This document shows positions 5,301 through 14,300 of a DNA stretch of 64,000 nucleotides, piece after piece. The notes under the pieces were generated by a model that saw only the letters and a program-made list of their open reading frames with translations, was not told where the DNA came from and searched no databases. Position numbers and translations under genes: made by a program. Position 1 is the first letter of the stretch; every line of letters starts with the position of its first letter. This DNA is from Saccostrea echinata (taxonomy: Eukaryota), in assembly GCF_033153115.1 (NCBI RefSeq), contig NW_026889759.1, forward strand, positions 10,726,001 to 10,790,000, read 5' to 3'.

Positions 5301-8300
5301 GAGCTGGGAGAAGAATGGATTTCTCATGGACATGAAATGAAAATAAAAAGAACACCAGAGAAGAATTGACCTGCAAATAAAAATACACAGAACACATATA
5401 TTAATCAAGGTATCTCACTACATGAATATATACAAAACTTATATAAAATGTAAGAAATACTGTATACAGGGAAATTTTTTCCCCCATTTTATTTTCGCCC
5501 CTTTCACCCTACTCACAGTTGGGCGAATTTAAAATGGGGTGAATTCAAGAAAAGCTGTATAATTTCTTGAACAGAATTGTGATTGGACAAATTTAAAATG
5601 GGGCAAAATTGTTTGCAAGTATGAAAGGGCGAAAATAACACAAGGCAAAAATAACCCTGTATACAGTTTACTCACCAGAGCTATTCTGAAGTTCCTGTCA
5701 TTGGGAACACACAGTAGATGTAGTGATGATGGCAACAAGAACAGTACTGTTGTCAAAAGACTAAAAAGGAAAATATCAAGTTGAGAAACAACTCTGGCAA
5801 ATATGTAATACCACAGCTAACTTATGTAACATAATTACGAGTAGTTATTAAATCAGATGTTGTGGTTCTATCATCGTATTCTATTGGTTTTTTACTCACC
5901 TGAGCTAAGAGCTCAGATGACCTTTTCTGATCATCTTTTGTCTGTTTTCATCTGCTCTAGCTCTGTCAACTTTTTCACATTTTTGACTACTTTTCAAAAA
6001 CTATTGGGTCATTCACACAACATTTGTTGGTCAGAGAGAAAATGCAGATGAAGGGCTATGACCCTTCCAAAGGGAGATAATAAATAATAATAATAAAAAA
6101 AAAATGTTTATTTATGTATGCAAATAACATAAATTGATTCATACATTTCCAGTTTTAATATGATTTACATGACAAATGAGGATAAAAGACTATCATTTAC
6201 ATAATTTTACATCCATTAGAACCACATACATTTGACTTACCATATTAGAACCAGCTGATCCACAGTAAACATCTGTTTAAGTTTGATAAGGACTGCTAAA
6301 CTGCACCAAACATTGGCAACTTTATCCTAAACAGAATGAACAATTTCATATACATGTACTTAAAAATTCCTGTAATTTAATTCTTGCATCAATTTGCATG
6401 TGTATATAAAACAAGAGGCTCCCCAGGAGTCAGACTATCTCATCTGGCTGTAGCCAATTAAAAAATCTAATACTTGTCTGTACTAAGAACCAAAATTCAC
6501 CTAACCTTGAAAGTTCAGGGGTAAGGATTCGAAAAATGGATGATCAGACAGCTATAGAAATTGCTAAATACTTTGTACATAGATTTTGTCTCTTTAACCA
6601 TTTTTGTTTTTACAATTTTCATCTATTGGATTATCAGATAGCTATAGAAATTGTTAAATACATATATTTTGTCTTATCCAACATTTGTTTTTACAATTTC
6701 AATCTATTGTATGATTTAGTATAACAATGTAGCCAAAAACTACACAATAACAGATTTATATTTCAGGGGCTATAACTCCAAAATTTGAGATCAAATATTA
6801 ATGAAATTTCGTAAGACAAACAGACCTTATTACACCATCTGATTTTGTCATTATAGTTATACATGCATAACTCCAATAATTTTCAAGAAATCCTATTTCT
6901 GACTAGATATGTGAAATCATGTCTCTTACGTATTCTAATGCAGTAATCCCATGTCAGCTGTTGTTAAGATCGTGTTTCAGTACTCTTATGACAAGGTGTA
7001 AAAACAGCTAAAAGTGCAATTTAACAGTTTTATAACAAAAACAGCACTGTATTCTTGCATGATTTTTTCTCTCTGTATTTTGTTTTGTAATACATTTATG
7101 TAACATAATGCTTGAATTGATTGAATTTGCTGAGCATAGCTTAGTGGGTTTCAAAAAAGTTCCAGATTTAAAAAGATTAACATACATGTACCTGTTATTA
7201 TGAAGATTTTGTGGATTATGTAATATATGCAGTTTTTCTAAATATTTGCAAAATAACAATTATACAATTTTTAATTTATTCTTTAAAGAAAATTAAATCA
7301 TGTGTATGTAATATGCACTAATTAGTTTTTCTAATAAGCTTGACTTCCATCAGGGACCTATATACTATAAGGACCTATACAGTGTATAAGTCCCTGCTTT
7401 TATGTAAATTTGCAAGAAATATGGTTTCTTAAATTCAGAAGACATTACTGAATATTTAGATTTTGTGCAAAATCTCCCGCTGTTCTATGATAAAACAGCC
7501 TCCACTGTGTGAACCTGGAATTTTATATCCATTTTATTTTGCCGAGACTGTCCTCCAAAATCATCTACATGAACCTGGTATTTTTATATCTGGTTACTGC
7601 CATCGAAAGAATATATAATTCTAATGACCTCATACAATCCTCTTGCCAAAGGAAAAACTCTGTGAAGAACCTGGAAAAGATTTTCTTTAGATCCTAGAAA
7701 GGGCAACCAGCATGCTGTAAAAGTTGTCAACACAACAGTAGCTATCTTAAAAAGATGTGGTATTCTGCAAAGGAAAGAAAATAGACTACAAGAGTGTAAA
7801 TACTCTAAAATTACATTTGATTTTTATGAAATTATCAATAACAATATACCTTGTCCATTTCTGAAGGCACCATCCAAGCAGATAGCAAAAGAAGGGTAGT
7901 GCATGATAAAGCTCCATTTGTTTGTAGTTCAGAGCAAGACAAAAACATACCGAGCCCCAGAGGTGGAAACCATGGGAAATCCAAACTACTCCAAATAAGG
8001 CTAATCCCAAACTTACACAGTTGTATCTTTATGCAGGTCAAGGATAGTAGAAAACTTTGATAATTCAAAAGAAGTACTCTATAGGGATGCGCGATTTTAT
8101 CGGTATACCGGTATATCATGATTTTTTATTGCGTGATACGTATCGTGATACGAAGACTAAAATACCGGTATTTGGTACATAACTAAAAATATTCATTTGT
8201 TTGTTCAATCTATTGAATGACAATAACAGGAGGTGTTAAAATGTTGAAAACAGTTAAACAACTGCATCCAATCATTCTTTATATTAAATAAATAAATATT

Positions 8301-11300
8301 TAAACAGTAAAGTTATGCTTTTATAGCATATTTTTAGGAAAAATTATGGAAATTCATATGAAACTGTAGTACAAATTGTATGTAAAAATATCACGATTTA
8401 TCGTGATATTTTTGGGAAAAAATCGTGATATATCACGATACGAAATTTCTGCCGATACCCATCCCTAGTACTCTAACTTTGATGCACAACAATGCACCTA
8501 ATTTCATGACTGAGAAAGAGAGAGAATGAAAGAGAGAATAATTATAACTTCTTTGAAAGGATACTGAAAATGGCCATGGTCAATGAGCAAGAAACCAGGA
8601 TACAACAGAACAACCAGTGATAATTTGATCTGTGAATACACAAGGTTTAAAAAGGAAGGTAATTTTTATACAATTTTCAAAAAATATAACCTTACCGAGA
8701 AAAATGATGTTTTCAATCTCCAGTGTTATAAAACTTAATTCTACAAACCCTTTCCTGTATATGAAGTTTCTGCTGAACAAAGAACAAAATAACAGCAGGA
8801 AAAAATATGGCAACATCAGCAACCAGCACTGAAAATGGTAGAAAAAATGTTAAAAGTGACAACATCTGAAAATCACTGAAGAGTTTTTACATGTACAATA
8901 CATGTACATCATACTATTATTTCTAAGTATTTTTTTATTTCTTCGTACATCATAAATCTGATACATGTAACATTGCTCTTAAATATTAGCATGAAATTTC
9001 ATTTATTTAATTTAAAACAGAAGTTATACCAGTGTATCTCATGAACAGTTTGTGGGCATAGCTTTCGTGTCCATGGGATTCCTTTAAAGCCACCCAGGAT
9101 GGATTTATTTTGTGGGCACTGGAATTAATGTAAACTGAACATGAATAGTCAACAACTTCAGTTGTACAGCATTGAAAAATCTTGATCAGAAGCTAAGTAT
9201 CAGAATATAAATTAGCTAAACTTATGTCTTATGGTACTTACATTGCACCACAAAGCCAGCTATGATAGGCAGTCAAAGGGGGATAATCCAATCCCCAGTA
9301 CGATAAATTGTTGTTAATGCCATTGAAATACCTAAAAAAATTTAAAAGAAATTACTTATGATATTTAATTACTTTTTAAATTACTTATATTTCCTTTCTG
9401 ATAGAACACAAATACATGTACTACATATATTCATAGAAATGCAATGAAATCAGAAAAGAAGAGAGAGACAAAATTTACCGATTTGTACTGTGGACCAACT
9501 TTTATACATGTGTGATAAATATTTGGATATTTATGGTTGTGACACAGTGAAAGACTTTAAAATTTTGAAACAGAAATCTTTATAGAAAACATGAGTTGTG
9601 TTGCAGACCAGTGAATAAAAAATGTCCCATACAGTAGTTCGTTCACAGTAATGGGCCTCTTTTATGGGTTTGCATTCTATTTTACATGTATTATAAATTA
9701 AGTTCATTTAAAAGCAGTTGAATTGCTAGTTGACAAAGAAGCATTTGTAAACTACTGAACATCAAAATTAACAATTAAGAAGTTTTATTACTAATACTCT
9801 CATTAATGTCATATCAAAGGATGCCTAAACATGAATTATCTACATTATAGCAACAAAAGGTATATGGGTGAATTAAAAAAAAATGACCACCAAACTGAAT
9901 TTTTTGGGCAAAATTCAACTACTTATAACATATTTTTCACTTATATCATCATATTGCAAATGCATTCTAGAACAGAATAGAATAGACAATTGGATTAAAA
10001 AGTTTCAGAATTTTTATTAGTAAAATTTCTTTTGAAAAAAGAAAATATCATTACACCTTAAAAGACTTTCTAAAATACATAATCACAAGAAATTATAGTT
10101 TTTTATGCTTCAAAATGGTAAAAGGGGTATAAATGATTAAATCTAGACCTTGAATGAGTATCTTCCCTTGTACATGTGACAAAAAATTGGCTTTCTGATT
10201 GTTATTTTACATTATTTTTTCAATTCTGGTTTGAAAAGTTTTAATATGAAAAAAAATATGAAGCAATAAAATTCCCCAAAATTCACTTTTTTGTTCGTTC
10301 AAGTCAGTTCTTTAAATCTAAGCCAAAATGAATTGTTATATACGAGTTCTCTTACAAAAAATACTAGATTTTGAAGTGACCCTAAGTTACATTATTGTGT
10401 TGCACTCCTGACATCTGATATGTATTTTATTTAACATTGTTTTAAAAATTATAACACACAATAACCCATTCTTACTTTGTAAATCAATTTGTCGTGTCGA
10501 TATTTTTCATCGTTTACAGCAGGTTTTTCATATTTTGAAGACCTTAAAACATGATTATTTGCAAAGTGTAATATATATAAATTGTATTTAAAATATATGT
10601 GAAATGATGAAAACTATTCTCCGAATTGACTGTAAAATTTCTGTAATTTGTTGATAGACATAGTGTTTTGAACATCAAATAGTATCAAGCATTTTTTTTC
10701 AACTTATGTTTTAGTAAAGATAGTTAAAAAGCATTGGTAATTATGAAGCAGTTTTGTTGCACTCCTGACTGCAGTAAAGTTTAAAATTAAAACCAGAGAA
10801 CACAAAAATTCATAAAGTGTTAGAAACATCAAGTGGTAGTGAAATTGTGCAATACTTATAGTCCAATACTTCATAATTAAAACAGATGAAAATATTTAAA
10901 ATTAGCATTTTATCTGTAATTATACCCTATTTTATGCCAAAAAACTAGCTTAAATGTACAGTGTATATTTAGAAGATAAAATATATTTTAAAGCATATTT
11001 TCCCTTAGAAGACAAACACAGTAACCCACCAGAAAAATTCTACTCATCATTTTTTTCTTTATTTTCATTCTTATTGGATGATTTATAATTCTAACATATT
11101 TGTTGCACTCCTGACCAAAAGCATTGGGGCCTTTAAAGTAGAGTTGTGAAGTGAAAATTACATAAGAACTTGTTCTGTTGTTTCAGTGAAGTTGAGGAGG
11201 AATTACTTGAATTTTATGACAATGTTTTAGTGTGTTTATTTTTAACATTCATTTAAAAAATCACAAAAAAGATAAAAGTTCACATCTGAATTGATAAAAT

Positions 11301-14300
11301 TGAAAAAGGAAGGATTTTAATAATAAAACTGTCAATAATATAGCATTAAATTATACAAAAAGATCATTATTAATTAATGAATACTTCTAAGCATGAATAG
11401 AAGTCTTTTCGTCACACAACCTGAATCTTTAAAAAAATGTGTTGCACTCCTGACCATAGAAATATGGATCTGAAGCACAGACAGATCCTGTAATTGATAA
11501 TTTATTTGGTAAAAATGTTCTTTGTGTCTTTATTTTCCAAAATAAAAATCAGAAAATCATATAATGATAATAGTTTTTTCATGCTTGGGAGCAAAACATC
11601 AAATGTTGCACTCCTGACATTTTTGGGTATGCACATATACTTGACTCTCATTAATGCTGCTTGTGATTTATATAACATTTTTAAGTTTTAAAATGTATAT
11701 CAGTTACTATTTTACACTTCCAAAATTCTTTTTTGTCTTAATTTTCTATCAGAATTTTACAATTGATGTTTTTTGGCAACACTACATTTTTTCTGTTGCA
11801 CTCCTGACATGGTATTACATTTTTTAAAACATCAGCCATGACCACAACTTGATTAAACAAAAGTTATGACAGTCCACATTTAAAGCTCAATACTCTGAAT
11901 ATTATCAGGAAAGTCTTTATTTTCAACATGAAGCATTATTTTTTATTGCACAGATCTCCAGAAAATATTGAAATTTCAAAATGTCACAAAAAGGTGTTGC
12001 ACTCCTGACAATTTTAGCATCATTTTTGGGCATAACTTTTTTGTTAATTGAGATATCAACGAGATATTTGGCAGGTATTTAGACACCATCTAAAGACATA
12101 TGCTGAGACATAGAAATCTATTTTCATTGCCTGTATTTTTAGTGTGGGTTGATAAATATGCATTTGGTCATTTTTTTTAATTCACCCATAAACAAAAGTC
12201 TAAGAATATCAGATTAATAGTCTACCACTGTTGAGGGGGCAAGTGATAAGTGATTTCCATCCAGTGCCTCTGAGCTTCATAATCACCAAACATAGGTGGT
12301 CTTCCAGCCCCTTAAAAAAGATCCAGACCATGATATGCTGTTTGCAAATAGCCACTTTGGAATAAGCACAAGTTTATTATTGATCATTNNNNNNNNNNNN
12401 NNNNNNNNNNNNNNNNNNNNNNNNNNNNNNNNNNNNNNNNNNNNNNNNNNNNNNNNNNNNNNNNNNNNNNNNNNNNNNNNNNNNNNNNNNNNNNNNNNNN
12501 NNNNNNNNNNNNNNNNNNNNNNNNNNNNNNNTTTGTGATTGAGAATAATCAGGAAAATTAAACTCATTTTTTAGCAGTTGTGTATTGCCGTTAGGGGTAA
12601 ACCACTATAATCATTTAACCGTTCCATCAGACATCATCCAAAAAATTGTAAAGCAAGAAAATTATTTCTTCTGTCTTAAAACTTTCCTTATAACTAGGAA
12701 ATAAAACAATCATGTAAGTTTATATACAATCTATTTATAGAGCAAGGTGCCAGTAAAACACATCACAAATTAACAATACAATGTAATTCACAATCTCAAT
12801 TTTCTGAAAATTCAGTCACATTATAACTACATAGGTAGAAATAGTCTTTGGACTGGACCTCATGGAAATGCAACTTACATACAACGTCATCTGATGTCAC
12901 AGTCTAGACTGTGTCTCATGCGGTTCGAATTTTGAAGAGGTGGTTCAAAGTTACAAGTGTAAGCTGTGTAAATGTTTTTTTATGGTAAAACTGCTATCGC
13001 CCTAACAGTCACACTGTAAAAAATATTACAGTATAAACAACAGGGGTTGAAATATACGGTAGCCCGACTCCCGGGGCTTGTCATTTTTAGACTCAGGCTA
13101 CCTTATTCAAATGTAACGATAGTCAGTCGGACTAGCTGAATGGGAAAAAAAATCTCGTCAGTTTACTTTCTTCTTTTATGTAGACTGGTTCCTTTTGACT
13201 GAGAACTAGCTGAATTTGTTTCAGTCACCAAAGAGACTGAAACTTCAACTTGTTACGTTTTCATTTTGCATAAAAAAAAATTATTGGGTAGTTAGTTTGA
13301 GGTTTGGGCTAGTAACTTTTCACTGATGATAGTAGCCCCTGGCTAGTGGGATTTCCAGGAAAATTTCAACCCCTGAACAATCATTGACCATTAACATGAT
13401 TAAATAAACAATTTTTTAAACAGTAAAACTAGATCACTACAGTAGCTAACGTACTGAGGATAAGCATTGTCATCAAATGTAATATGTTGACGGGACGAAC
13501 GTATGGGTGAACACAGATACCTATTCACCTATTTAATTTATATCCACCTCATAGTCTTCAAACCACGAGACATTTTGAATGTCTAGACTGACATCACATG
13601 AAGTTGTATGAGGGGATTTGAAATGTTCTGAGAACTGTTTGATAAAATATTAACCGTATACATGTATCAGAAATTACCGAGTTTGATATAAATGGACAAA
13701 TCACAAAAATATACACATAATGTGATGTCACTTTGTAATTTTTATTATGTTATAACTCCAAAAAGGATGTAAGAATCTTGTGTGTTTAGCATACTGACCA
13801 TAAAAATGACGAAACAAGAGACACAATTTCAGTAAAGTAAAATTTTAAAGTCAACGTTTGTTCATTACTTGGATGAATACTAACGGACACAACTGCCAGT
13901 TGGGAAAATGTTTAAGACTACCAGTCTATCATATGGAGTTATATTCAGGAGCTCGTATACTATAGGCTATAGTTCTGAGGTGGTTTAAGAGTGTGTCAAA
14001 CATAGCATGTTATTATCAACTCTCGTGCAAAACCTTGGGTAAAAAAGACGCCGCTTTGAGAAAATCACAAAGTTGACAATCACGAACAATCCTAGTTTAT
14101 ATCAAGCTGTAACCGTGCTTTACTTTGTCTATAAGATTTAGTTATAATTTCGAATTTCCTCTGTCAAATTAAAAAATAAAAGTTTCCAGAAGATTAACTG
14201 AATGTTTGAATCCATCTCATTAATCATAAACAATATTAAATAAATAGAACCTGAATATTTGTGAAGGGAAACCAGCCATCGCACCAAAACAGCAACGAGC

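What the first reader, a model, noticed from the sequence alone, without database searches (positions are those of the whole stretch)
9863..12190. TIR element carrying seven perfect, same-orientation 15-mers separated by unique spacers
Seen: TGTTGCACTCCTGAC occurs without mismatch at 10398, 10755, 11101, 11440, 11604, 11794 and 11995. All copies are on one strand, inside a ~27-bp TIR pair, and I saw none elsewhere in the window. Start-to-start spacings are 357, 346, 339, 164, 190 and 201 bp. The AT-rich spacers show no similarity to each other by eye and contain no ORF, so this is not a tandem repeat. The first ~530 bp of the element lack the motif. An 8-mer AACAAAAG flanks both ends but is offset by 3 nt on the left, so the TSD type (TA or 8 bp) is ambiguous. 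Known: transposase-binding repeats are normally subterminal and arranged symmetrically at the two ends. Inference: a polar internal array with invariant sites suggests selection on a protein-binding or recombination site. Possibilities are a transposase loading array, a host-factor array with roughly one- and two-nucleosome spacing, or a cassette array that gains and loses spacers at the motif. This is the best candidate here for an undescribed system.
Basis: partly seen in the sequence, partly recalled or inferred. Interest (0 to 1): 0.78.

Follow-up and report, generated by a model that had tools for sequence, protein, structure and literature searches.

The report
Jumping gene with seven conserved boxes
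This is one copy of an abundant, gene-less cut-and-paste transposon carrying seven identical 15-base boxes that stay intact while the DNA between them drifts, so the element probably needs them to spread.

Summary
TGTTGCACTCCTGAC occurs seven times, perfectly, on one strand, at the stated places and nowhere else in the window. The spacers are unrelated to each other.

The element is window 9866-12187. It has 24-bp terminal inverted repeats (GGG...CCC) and a 4-bp target duplication of AWWT type, perfect in 27 of 30 copies. AWWT duplications are reported for Sola1 and Sola2 transposons, so I file it as a non-autonomous Sola-type element. I found no transposase partner.

The family is large: 4355 perfect boxes in the genome, and 36 further full-length copies that are all colinear. 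This rules out cassette shuffling.

The boxes are protected:
- 8 substitutions against about 54 expected in 30 copies.
- 6 of 90 box bases changed in a relative that is about 23% diverged.

Inserted copies do decay, so selection acts through transposition. My best reading is that the boxes are docking sites for a sequence-specific protein needed for spread. That step is inferred, not shown.

The scan noted this family before on other DNA (s1-803112, s1-817867).

The parts
9862..9865 (.). Left copy of the 4-bp target-site duplication (ATAT)
   Evidence: Read directly. The 4-bp duplication is perfect in 27 of 30 copies, with consensus A-W-W-T.
9866..9889 (+). Left terminal inverted repeat, GGGTGAATT(A)9TGACCA
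   Evidence: Inverted-repeat pairs I1 and I11. The ends are aligned in 30 copies. The 24-mer pattern occurs 432 times in the genome against 0 for the control.
9890..10397 (+). Box-free left part of the element (about 530 bp with the TIR)
   Evidence: No box match of 11 or more of 15 bases anywhere in the element outside the seven boxes. It is shared at 68% identity with the distant relative L081.
10398..10412 (+). Box 1
   Evidence: Perfect in 29 of 30 copies.
10755..10769 (+). Box 2
   Evidence: Perfect in 28 of 30 copies.
11101..11115 (+). Box 3
   Evidence: Perfect in 30 of 30 copies.
11440..11454 (+). Box 4
   Evidence: Perfect in 30 of 30 copies.
11604..11618 (+). Box 5
   Evidence: Perfect in 25 of 30 copies.
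11794..11808 (+). Box 6
   Evidence: Perfect in 30 of 30 copies.
11995..12009 (+). Box 7
   Evidence: Perfect in 30 of 30 copies.
12165..12187 (-). Right terminal inverted repeat
12188..12191 (.). Right copy of the target-site duplication (ATAA, one mismatch to the left copy)

Best explanation
Window 9866-12187 is one 2.3-kb copy of a high-copy, non-coding, cut-and-paste DNA transposon.

Shown:
- It has 24-bp terminal inverted repeats (GGG...CCC) and a 4-bp AWWT target duplication. That duplication is the one reported for Sola1 and Sola2 elements, so it is most likely a non-autonomous Sola-type element moved in trans by a transposase encoded elsewhere.
- Its right three quarters carry seven co-oriented, identical 15-bp boxes separated by unique AT-rich spacers of fixed length.
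- The boxes plus about 5 bp on either side change several times more slowly than the rest of the element along the lineages that kept transposing.
- Boxes do decay in copies that have landed.

Inferred:
- The boxes are cis-acting sites that an element must keep in order to leave descendants.
- Each box most likely docks one molecule, or one domain, of a sequence-specific DNA-binding protein. This could be a second DNA-binding module of the transposase or a partner protein. The array would then raise the local concentration of the transposition machinery on the element, or hold it in a favourable chromatin state, and so favour excision and copy gain.
- Because the boxes do not resemble the terminal repeats, the factor that reads them is not simply the end-binding activity.
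For: Family and ends:
- 4355 perfect boxes in the 923-Mb genome against 0 for the reversed control.
- 2006 first-look candidates for the whole element. 41 match rows were returned, of which 37 are full-length colinear copies (the window's own plus 36 others), 94-96% identical to the window.
- The 4-bp TSD is perfect in 27 of 30 copies. Among those 27 the four positions read A 23, W 24, W 22 and T 21.
- AWWT is called a hallmark of Sola1 in PMC3845634 (passages) and is reported for Sola2 elements in PMC3627910 (passages).

Box protection in 30 young copies:
- 8 substitutions in 3150 box bases against 1088 in 66663 elsewhere.
- 53.8 were expected from base-specific non-CpG rates (Poisson P about 1e-14).
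- 0 of 20000 random sets of seven 15-mers were as low.
- The cold zone spans about -5 to +19 relative to the box start.

Box protection in older and distant copies:
- The distant relative L081 was found through its left end, not through boxes. It is 68-70% identical overall, about 23% by substitutions alone.
- L081's six boxes carry 6 changes in 90 bases, P = 3.5e-5.
- Older copies picked through the TIR (L076-78) show 11 of 135 box bases changed against 266 of 1784 elsewhere, P = 0.03.
- Genome-wide, a box site is perfect about 622 times. Two control 15-mers from the spacers are perfect 381 and 415 times.

Decay after insertion: 1742 one-mismatch boxes exist in the genome.

Boxes are family-specific: only 36 of 4355 have G at +1, a base that no family box has there.

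Other points:
- Spacing is nearly invariant in 30 copies.
- Precedents for internal or multiple cis sites that tune mobility are mPing (PMC9921582, abstract) and Galileo THAP sites (PMC3688188, abstract).
Against: - I found no transposase partner, so superfamily membership rests on the TSD and the presence of TIRs only.
- No protein is known to bind the box.
- The boxes share nothing with the terminal repeats. The best non-box match in the element is 10 of 15 bases, no more than in shuffles.
- The array is polar and internal, unlike the symmetric subterminal sites usual for transposases.
- In the seven older copies other 15-mers are as well kept as the boxes; box ranks fall at 6-28% of windows.
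- One of two control 15-mers shows a one-mismatch to perfect ratio (about 0.5) close to that of the box (0.40).
- Most older copies were found through a perfect box, which biases that count.
- The 30 young copies were the best matches to a query with seven perfect boxes, which is a slight bias.
Confidence: 0.55

Rival explanations
1. Host-factor array. The boxes are sites for a host DNA-binding protein, for example a multi-zinc-finger, insulator-like or nucleosome-phasing factor. The element spreads about 4000 such sites through the genome. The spacing of roughly one nucleosome (165-201 bp) or two (337-357 bp) reflects phased chromatin that keeps the element accessible or shielded from silencing.
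For: - A 15-bp asymmetric site with a footprint of about 25 bp suits a multi-domain DNA binder.
- Spacings are fixed in 30 copies and roughly kept in L081: 353, 154, 193, 232.
- The boxes are unlike the TIRs, so a factor other than the end-binding transposase is needed in any case.
Against: - Boxes decay in landed copies: 1742 one-mismatch variants. So there is no sign of host-level purifying selection at individual insertions.
- Almost no boxes lie outside the family: at most 36 of 4355 have a non-family base at +1. A host factor would therefore have no evident host targets with this exact site.
- Fixed spacing also follows trivially from colinear descent.
- No chromatin data could be consulted.
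Confidence: 0.2
2. RNA-level motif. The element is transcribed from its box-free left part. The seven boxes act in the RNA as repeated targets of a small RNA or an RNA-binding protein, which would explain why all point the same way.
For: - The strict co-orientation and the box-free 5' region are what a transcript-level function predicts.
- Fifteen perfect nucleotides fit a guide-RNA match.
Against: - No Rfam family matched at E up to 1.
- Predicted accessibility of the boxes in RNA equals that of random windows on both strands: 0.48 against 0.49 on the + strand and 0.35 against 0.41 on the - strand.
- The only runs that hold the element are contigs whose RNA status is a guess, and they showed no starts, ends or joints at boxes.
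- It is unclear why a target for silencing would be selected for in the mobile lineage.
Confidence: 0.1
3. Recombination or cassette sites. The boxes are crossover or cleavage sites at which spacers are gained, lost or exchanged, as in an integron.
For: - Two young truncated copies end 1 nt after box 4 (query 1593) and 3 nt before box 6 (query 1929).
- Among 22 box-4 sites whose next base is not C, 13 have A. A is the base that follows boxes 1, 5, 6 and 7, as expected if some copies lost DNA between two boxes.
Against: - The window's copy and 36 further full-length copies have the same seven spacers in the same order.
- All 30 aligned copies have seven boxes at fixed distances.
- The deletions I could read do not join box to box: L061 674-1009, L079 579-1370, L081 931-1329.
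- No copy with a foreign spacer was seen. Extra DNA in L063, L064 and L065 lies away from boxes and looks like nested insertions.
- Rare box-to-box loss would also arise from plain microhomology.
Confidence: 0.05
4. Relic without function. The array is what remains of an old tandem repeat, and the boxes are merely a mutationally cold or recently homogenised stretch.
For: - Bivalve transposons often carry satellite-like arrays (PMC7492417, search listing only).
- Unit lengths near 170-200 bp and their doubles resemble monomers and dimers.
Against: - There is no detectable similarity between spacers.
- There are no degenerate boxes at mid-spacer.
- Base-specific rates cannot explain 8 observed against 54 expected substitutions.
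- The boxes stayed identical across about 23% divergence.
- Tracts of 15 bp are too short for ordinary gene conversion.
Confidence: 0.05

Closest known systems
Non-autonomous Sola1 / Sola2 DNA transposons (for example Sola1_NA MITEs of insects; Sola2-type elements of Dictyostelium)
   Same: - A 4-bp AT-rich target duplication of AWWT type.
- Terminal inverted repeats that begin with GG.
- No coding capacity and a high copy number.
Sources: PMC3845634 passages, PMC3627910 passages, and my counts.
   Different: - No sequence similarity of the ends to a catalogued Sola family could be tested, because Repbase and Dfam were not available.
- No DDD transposase partner was found.
- The passages I read mention no polar internal array of identical boxes for Sola elements.
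Internal and subterminal cis-acting sequences of cut-and-paste transposons (mPing internal regions; multiple THAP sites in Galileo TIRs; Lemi1 sites in the Emigrant MITE)
   Same: Sequences other than the terminal repeats bind transposase or tune mobility, and several sites occur per element. Sources: PMC9921582 and PMC3688188 abstracts; PMC1636448 search listing only.
   Different: - Those sites are subterminal, short or part of long TIRs, and are usually arranged symmetrically.
- Here seven long (15-bp), identical, co-oriented boxes are spread over 1.6 kb of the interior with unique spacers, and they do not resemble the ends.
Transposon-borne arrays of host-factor sites (gypsy Su(Hw) insulator) and CENP-B boxes in alpha satellite (both recalled, not checked in any call)
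   Same: Repeated identical protein-binding boxes are embedded in otherwise divergent AT-rich DNA. The CENP-B boxes recur every one or two nucleosome lengths.
   Different: - The gypsy sites are packed within a few hundred bases.
- CENP-B boxes sit in true tandem repeats.
- Here the spacers are not repeats, and no binding protein is known.
Satellite-carrying mobile elements of bivalves (Helentron-borne arrays in the Pacific oyster)
   Same: Both are non-autonomous elements of a bivalve-type genome with a repeated internal module (PMC7492417, search listing and start of abstract only).
   Different: Those carry true tandem repeats and move by rolling circle. This element has TIRs, a TSD and non-homologous spacers.
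KolobokP composite transposons of bivalves
   Same: Both occur in bivalve-rich hosts, have 5'-RR...YY-3' termini and make a 4-bp duplication (PMC9587614: abstract, section 5, passages).
   Different: - Kolobok duplicates TTAA; 0 of 27 perfect TSDs here are TTAA.
- KolobokP has long terminal direct repeats, which this element lacks.

Membership tests
Sola superfamily (Sola1/Sola2), non-autonomous member | 4-bp target-site duplication | tested here: met
   27 of 30 copies have a perfect 4-bp duplication. The other 3, including the window's copy, differ at one base.
Sola superfamily (Sola1/Sola2), non-autonomous member | AT-rich AWWT target preference | tested here: met
   Among the 27 perfect TSDs the four positions read A 23, W 24, W 22 and T 21. 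The literature basis is (passages). Bao et al. 2009 itself is not held.
Sola superfamily (Sola1/Sola2), non-autonomous member | Terminal inverted repeats | tested here: met
   24-bp TIR.
Sola superfamily (Sola1/Sola2), non-autonomous member | Termini align over positions 1-11 with a catalogued Sola family (the Repbase rule; PMC4455052 passages) | not testable with these tools
   No Repbase or Dfam library is on hand. The one printed Sola1 TIR shares only the initial GG.
Sola superfamily (Sola1/Sola2), non-autonomous member | A DDD transposase-encoding partner with the same ends | tested here: inconclusive
   - All 9 TIR-bearing ends with a non-family next base belong to the same family.
- The one 3.8-kb TIR pair seen is a copy with a nested insert.
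- Only 100 of 432 TIR matches were listed.
- There is no Pfam model for Sola (PMC5751038 passages).
   The flanks of the 30 copies share only 4 bases.
   The duplications are 4 bp, and several lack TA altogether, for example ACCT, AAGT, ATTG, TGAA and AACT.
piggyBac / Kolobok | TTAA-specific duplication | tested here: not met
   0 of 27 perfect TSDs are TTAA.
Tandem-repeat-bearing transposon or satellite | Internal units are homologous to each other | tested here: not met
   28 pairwise local alignments gave no score clearly above shuffles. TRF found no array. No degenerate boxes lie between boxes.
Cassette array (integron-like or CRISPR-like) | Spacer content and order vary between copies, with breakpoints at the repeat | tested here: not met
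   The window's copy and 36 further full-length copies are colinear (37 of 41 match rows). Distances are fixed in 30 copies. The deletions I read are not box to box. Weak hints to the contrary appear.

The most novel reading that the evidence does not exclude
The seven boxes may be an obligatory, orientation-dependent loading array for a dedicated sequence-specific protein, distinct from the end-binding activity. That would be the first cis requirement defined for a Sola-type transposon. As a by-product, the element would have seeded several thousand identical 15-bp binding sites, at one- and two-nucleosome spacing, across a bivalve genome. There they could act as a dispersed chromatin-organising or insulator-like network.
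Probability: 0.2. Interest if true: 0.7.

Novelty: new variant of a known kind. Interest (0 to 1): 0.5.

Why it matters
Almost nothing is known about how Sola-type transposons work. A non-coding element that keeps seven identical internal boxes across roughly 23% of sequence divergence points to a cis requirement that can be tested directly: pull down the binding protein, or compare intact and mutated natural copies. It also gives a clean natural example of selection acting through transposition rather than on the host. If a host protein reads the boxes, the family has distributed thousands of identical sites through the genome, which would matter for gene regulation and chromatin structure in bivalves. 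The finding also corrects the element's borders and class, which is useful for repeat annotation.

Tried and rejected
- **Cassette or integron model:** rejected.
- **Diverged tandem repeat:** rejected.
- **8-bp or TA duplication:** rejected.
- **Known RNA family:** none found.
- **RNA accessibility of the boxes:** no different from random windows.
- **Box as a copy of the end-binding site:** no resemblance.
- **Motif in print:** the 15-mer and its reverse complement occur in 0 papers of the library. I ran no search of the papers for the concept of a polar internal box array as such. Neither the lists nor the passages I read describe one. Repbase, Dfam and the supplementary libraries of PMC9587614 and PMC10294476, which I could not see, may hold this family.
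- **Autonomous partner:** not found.
  - TIR pattern search: 432 matches, only 100 listed.
  - TIR plus a non-family next base: 9 hits, all the same family.
  - A 3.8-kb TIR pair: a nested insertion.
  - L075's odd left end: unique in the genome.
- **Expression:** the single runs search gave only contig-level runs whose RNA status is a guess. Laying them showed presence in organisms A and B, a diverged right end in organism C, and no starts, ends or box-linked joints.
- **Relatives through spurious ORF proteins:** the 65-aa ORF across box 5 has no homologue.
- **One-mismatch to perfect ratio as a conservation measure:** only weakly discriminating. Box 0.40, controls about 1.04 and about 0.5.
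- **Taxon:** not tested here. Earlier notes call it a bivalve (oyster or mussel-like).
- **Bao et al. 2009:** could not be read.

Full report
**Observation.** The window holds seven perfect copies of TGTTGCACTCCTGAC, all on the + strand, at 10398, 10755, 11101, 11440, 11604, 11794 and 11995. No further match with up to two mismatches exists in the 64 kb. None of 100 dinucleotide shuffles reached seven matches. Tandem Repeats Finder sees no array. Local alignments between the eight box-free segments score no better than shuffled controls: 28 pairs, highest z 3.1. There are no degenerate boxes hidden in the long spacers.

**Borders and class.** I aligned the window's copy with 29 other full-length copies and 40 bases of flank.
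- Similarity starts at GGGTGAATT and ends at AATTCACCC. The element is therefore window 9866-12187.
- It has a 24-bp terminal inverted repeat.
- The flanks share exactly four bases. The duplication is perfect in 27 of 30 copies. Among those 27 it reads A (23), W (24), W (22), T (21), most often ATAT.
- The window's own copy has ATAT and ATAA.
TA, 8-bp and TTAA duplications are all excluded.

A 4-bp AWWT duplication is described as a hallmark of Sola1 in PMC3845634 (passages). It is also reported for Sola2-type elements in PMC3627910 (passages). The original description (Bao et al. 2009) is not held. Bivalves are reported to carry Sola1, Sola2 and Sola3 elements (PMC10294476, passages). On these grounds I file the element as a non-autonomous Sola-type transposon. 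Membership rests on the duplication and the presence of TIRs, not on a transposase.

**Size and shape of the family.**
- The box occurs 4355 times in the 923-Mb genome against 0 for the reversed control.
- The whole element gave 2006 first-look candidates. 41 match rows were returned. 37 of them are full-length and colinear: the window's own copy plus 36 others that are 94-96% identical to it.
- The remaining four rows are three truncated or interrupted copies.
- In the 30 aligned copies the element is 2322-2337 bp long. All have seven boxes; 22 copies have seven perfect ones and 8 have six.
- Box-to-box distances are almost fixed: 357 in 30 of 30, 338 in 24, 337 in 16, 165 in 28, 191 in 28, 201 in 27.
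- Older copies of 80-88% identity also exist, as does one distant relative of 68-70% identity. The family has therefore been active for a long time with the same architecture.
- Extra DNA in some copies (L063, L064, L065, L015/L019) lies away from the boxes and looks like nested insertions.
- Nothing supports an array that gains and loses spacers.

**Are the boxes conserved more than the rest?** Yes, by several tests of unequal strength.
- *Young copies.* In the 30 young copies there are 8 substitutions in 3150 box bases and 1088 in 66663 other bases. Base-specific non-CpG rates predict 53.8 in the boxes. None of 20000 random sets of seven 15-mers was as low. Summed over the seven sites, the cold zone runs from about 5 bases before to 5 bases after the box, even though these flanks differ between sites.
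- *Distant relative.* L081 was found through similarity of its left end, so it is unbiased with respect to the boxes. It differs from the family consensus at about 23% of aligned bases but at only 6 of 90 box bases (P = 3.5e-5). Its box 3 was lost in a deletion.
- *TIR-picked older copies.* Three older copies picked through the TIR show 11 of 135 box bases changed against 266 of 1784 elsewhere (P = 0.03).
- *Pooled older copies.* The pooled figure for eleven older copies is 27 of 680 against 1334 of 12596. It is inflated because most were found through a perfect box.
- *Genome-wide.* A box site is perfect about 622 times, whereas two control 15-mers from spacers are perfect 381 and 415 times.

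Results against, or weaker than, this reading:
- The ratio of one-mismatch to perfect matches is 0.40 for the box, about 1.04 for one control and about 0.5 for the other. This measure separates them poorly.
- In the small set of older copies several other 15-mers are as well kept as the boxes.

**Where selection acts.** Boxes do decay: 1742 one-mismatch variants exist in the genome, and the older copies carry hits in them. There is thus no sign that each insertion is kept intact for the host. In a cut-and-paste family, changes on internal branches have passed the test of further transposition, while changes on terminal branches have not. The pattern is boxes nearly unchanged along lineages but eroding in landed copies. 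This is what one expects if an element needs its boxes to leave descendants. That is an inference from the counts; I could not build the full tree.

**What the boxes are not.**
- They are not copies of the terminal repeat. The best non-box match in the element is 10 of 15 bases, no more frequent than in shuffles.
- They are almost confined to this family. Only 36 of 4355 are followed by G, a base that follows none of the seven family boxes. The one such locus I read, L079, holds two of these sites and is an old family copy.
- No Rfam family matches.
- Predicted RNA accessibility of the boxes equals that of random windows.
- The only public runs that hold the element are kept as contigs whose RNA status is a guess. 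They show near-identical copies in two coded organisms and a diverged right end in a third, with no starts, ends or joints tied to boxes.

**Mechanism.** I commit to the following, at about 55%. The boxes are cis-acting docking sites for a sequence-specific DNA-binding protein that the element needs in order to spread. The protein may be a second DNA-binding module of the still unidentified transposase or a partner protein. The array loads several molecules along the right three quarters of the element. Shown: the sites, their protection and its footprint, the decay after insertion, and the lack of resemblance to the ends. Inferred: that a protein binds, and that binding favours excision or copy gain.

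Precedents exist for cis sequences beyond the terminal repeats that control mobility:
- internal regions of mPing (PMC9921582, abstract);
- multiple THAP sites in Galileo (PMC3688188, abstract);
- subterminal motifs of Emigrant (PMC1636448, listing only).

None of these, as far as I read them, is a polar array of long identical boxes with unique spacers.

Rivals, with my estimates:
- a host factor that organises chromatin on the element (20%);
- an RNA-level target motif (10%);
- recombination sites (5%);
- a functionless relic (5%).

**Loose ends.**
- Two young truncated copies end one base after box 4 and three bases before box 6.
- Of 22 box-4 sites not followed by C, 13 are followed by A, the base that follows boxes 1, 5, 6 and 7. 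This would fit occasional loss of DNA between two boxes.
- Twelve loci match only the first 142-154 bases of L075's divergent left end at 79-83%. They may be a sister family that shares the end, and they would be the first place to look for a partner.

**Comparison with the known, and novelty.** The element itself is an ordinary kind of thing: a non-autonomous Sola-type transposon of a bivalve-type genome. The taxon comes from earlier notes and was not tested here. The conserved, co-oriented internal box array is unusual. I therefore rate it a new variant of a known kind, of moderate interest. The scan had already noted the same family on other DNA of this genome (s1-803112, s1-817867). The earlier follow-up reached a similar docking-site reading. 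I tested the claims of conservation and spacing myself. I add the borders, the 4-bp AWWT duplication and the Sola assignment, the rejection of the cassette model, the footprint, and the argument that selection acts through transposition.

Noticed in passing
window 12389-12531: A run of 143 N lies about 200 bases downstream of the element. I left it as it is.
   Followed up: no
G000:C30:17301514-17303109 and G000:C18:1108416-1110351: Two young (95%) truncated copies end one base after box 4 and three bases before box 6. With only two cases this could be chance, or the boxes may be break or recombination points.
   Followed up: partly
22 genome sites listed: Box 4 followed by a base other than C: 13 A, 7 T and 2 G. 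The excess of A, the base that follows boxes 1, 5, 6 and 7, hints at rare box-to-box deletions or at a subfamily variant.
   Followed up: no
12 loci (for example G000:C76:2036602-2036739): These loci match only the first 142-154 bases of L075's divergent left end, at 79-83%. They may be a sister family sharing the transposon end, and so a lead to the autonomous partner.
   Followed up: no
G000:C56 at 9.90, 10.00, 10.16 and 10.25 Mb: Four hits with the same extent (1-192) and identity (77-78%) lie within 0.35 Mb. This looks like a local segmental duplication that carries an old copy.
   Followed up: no
L065 751-2234; L063 and L064: Other repeats are inserted into family copies: 1.48 kb with a 6-base overlap in L065, and about 1.0-1.4 kb pieces in L063 and L064. 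None is at a box.
   Followed up: partly
L079 805-878 and 624-636: An old copy has grown a (TA)n microsatellite in the spacer after box 5 and a run of 12 G before box 5.
   Followed up: no
window 5520-5610: GGGTGAATT occurs once more at 5537, inside an unrelated short repeat (AATTTAAAATGGGG occurs twice). Three matches to this 9-mer in the window are within chance.
   Followed up: yes
window 9966-9980 compared with the family consensus: The window's copy has a small rearranged or deleted patch near 9970 relative to other copies. The contigs of runs X1, X2 and X5 show insertions there.
   Followed up: no
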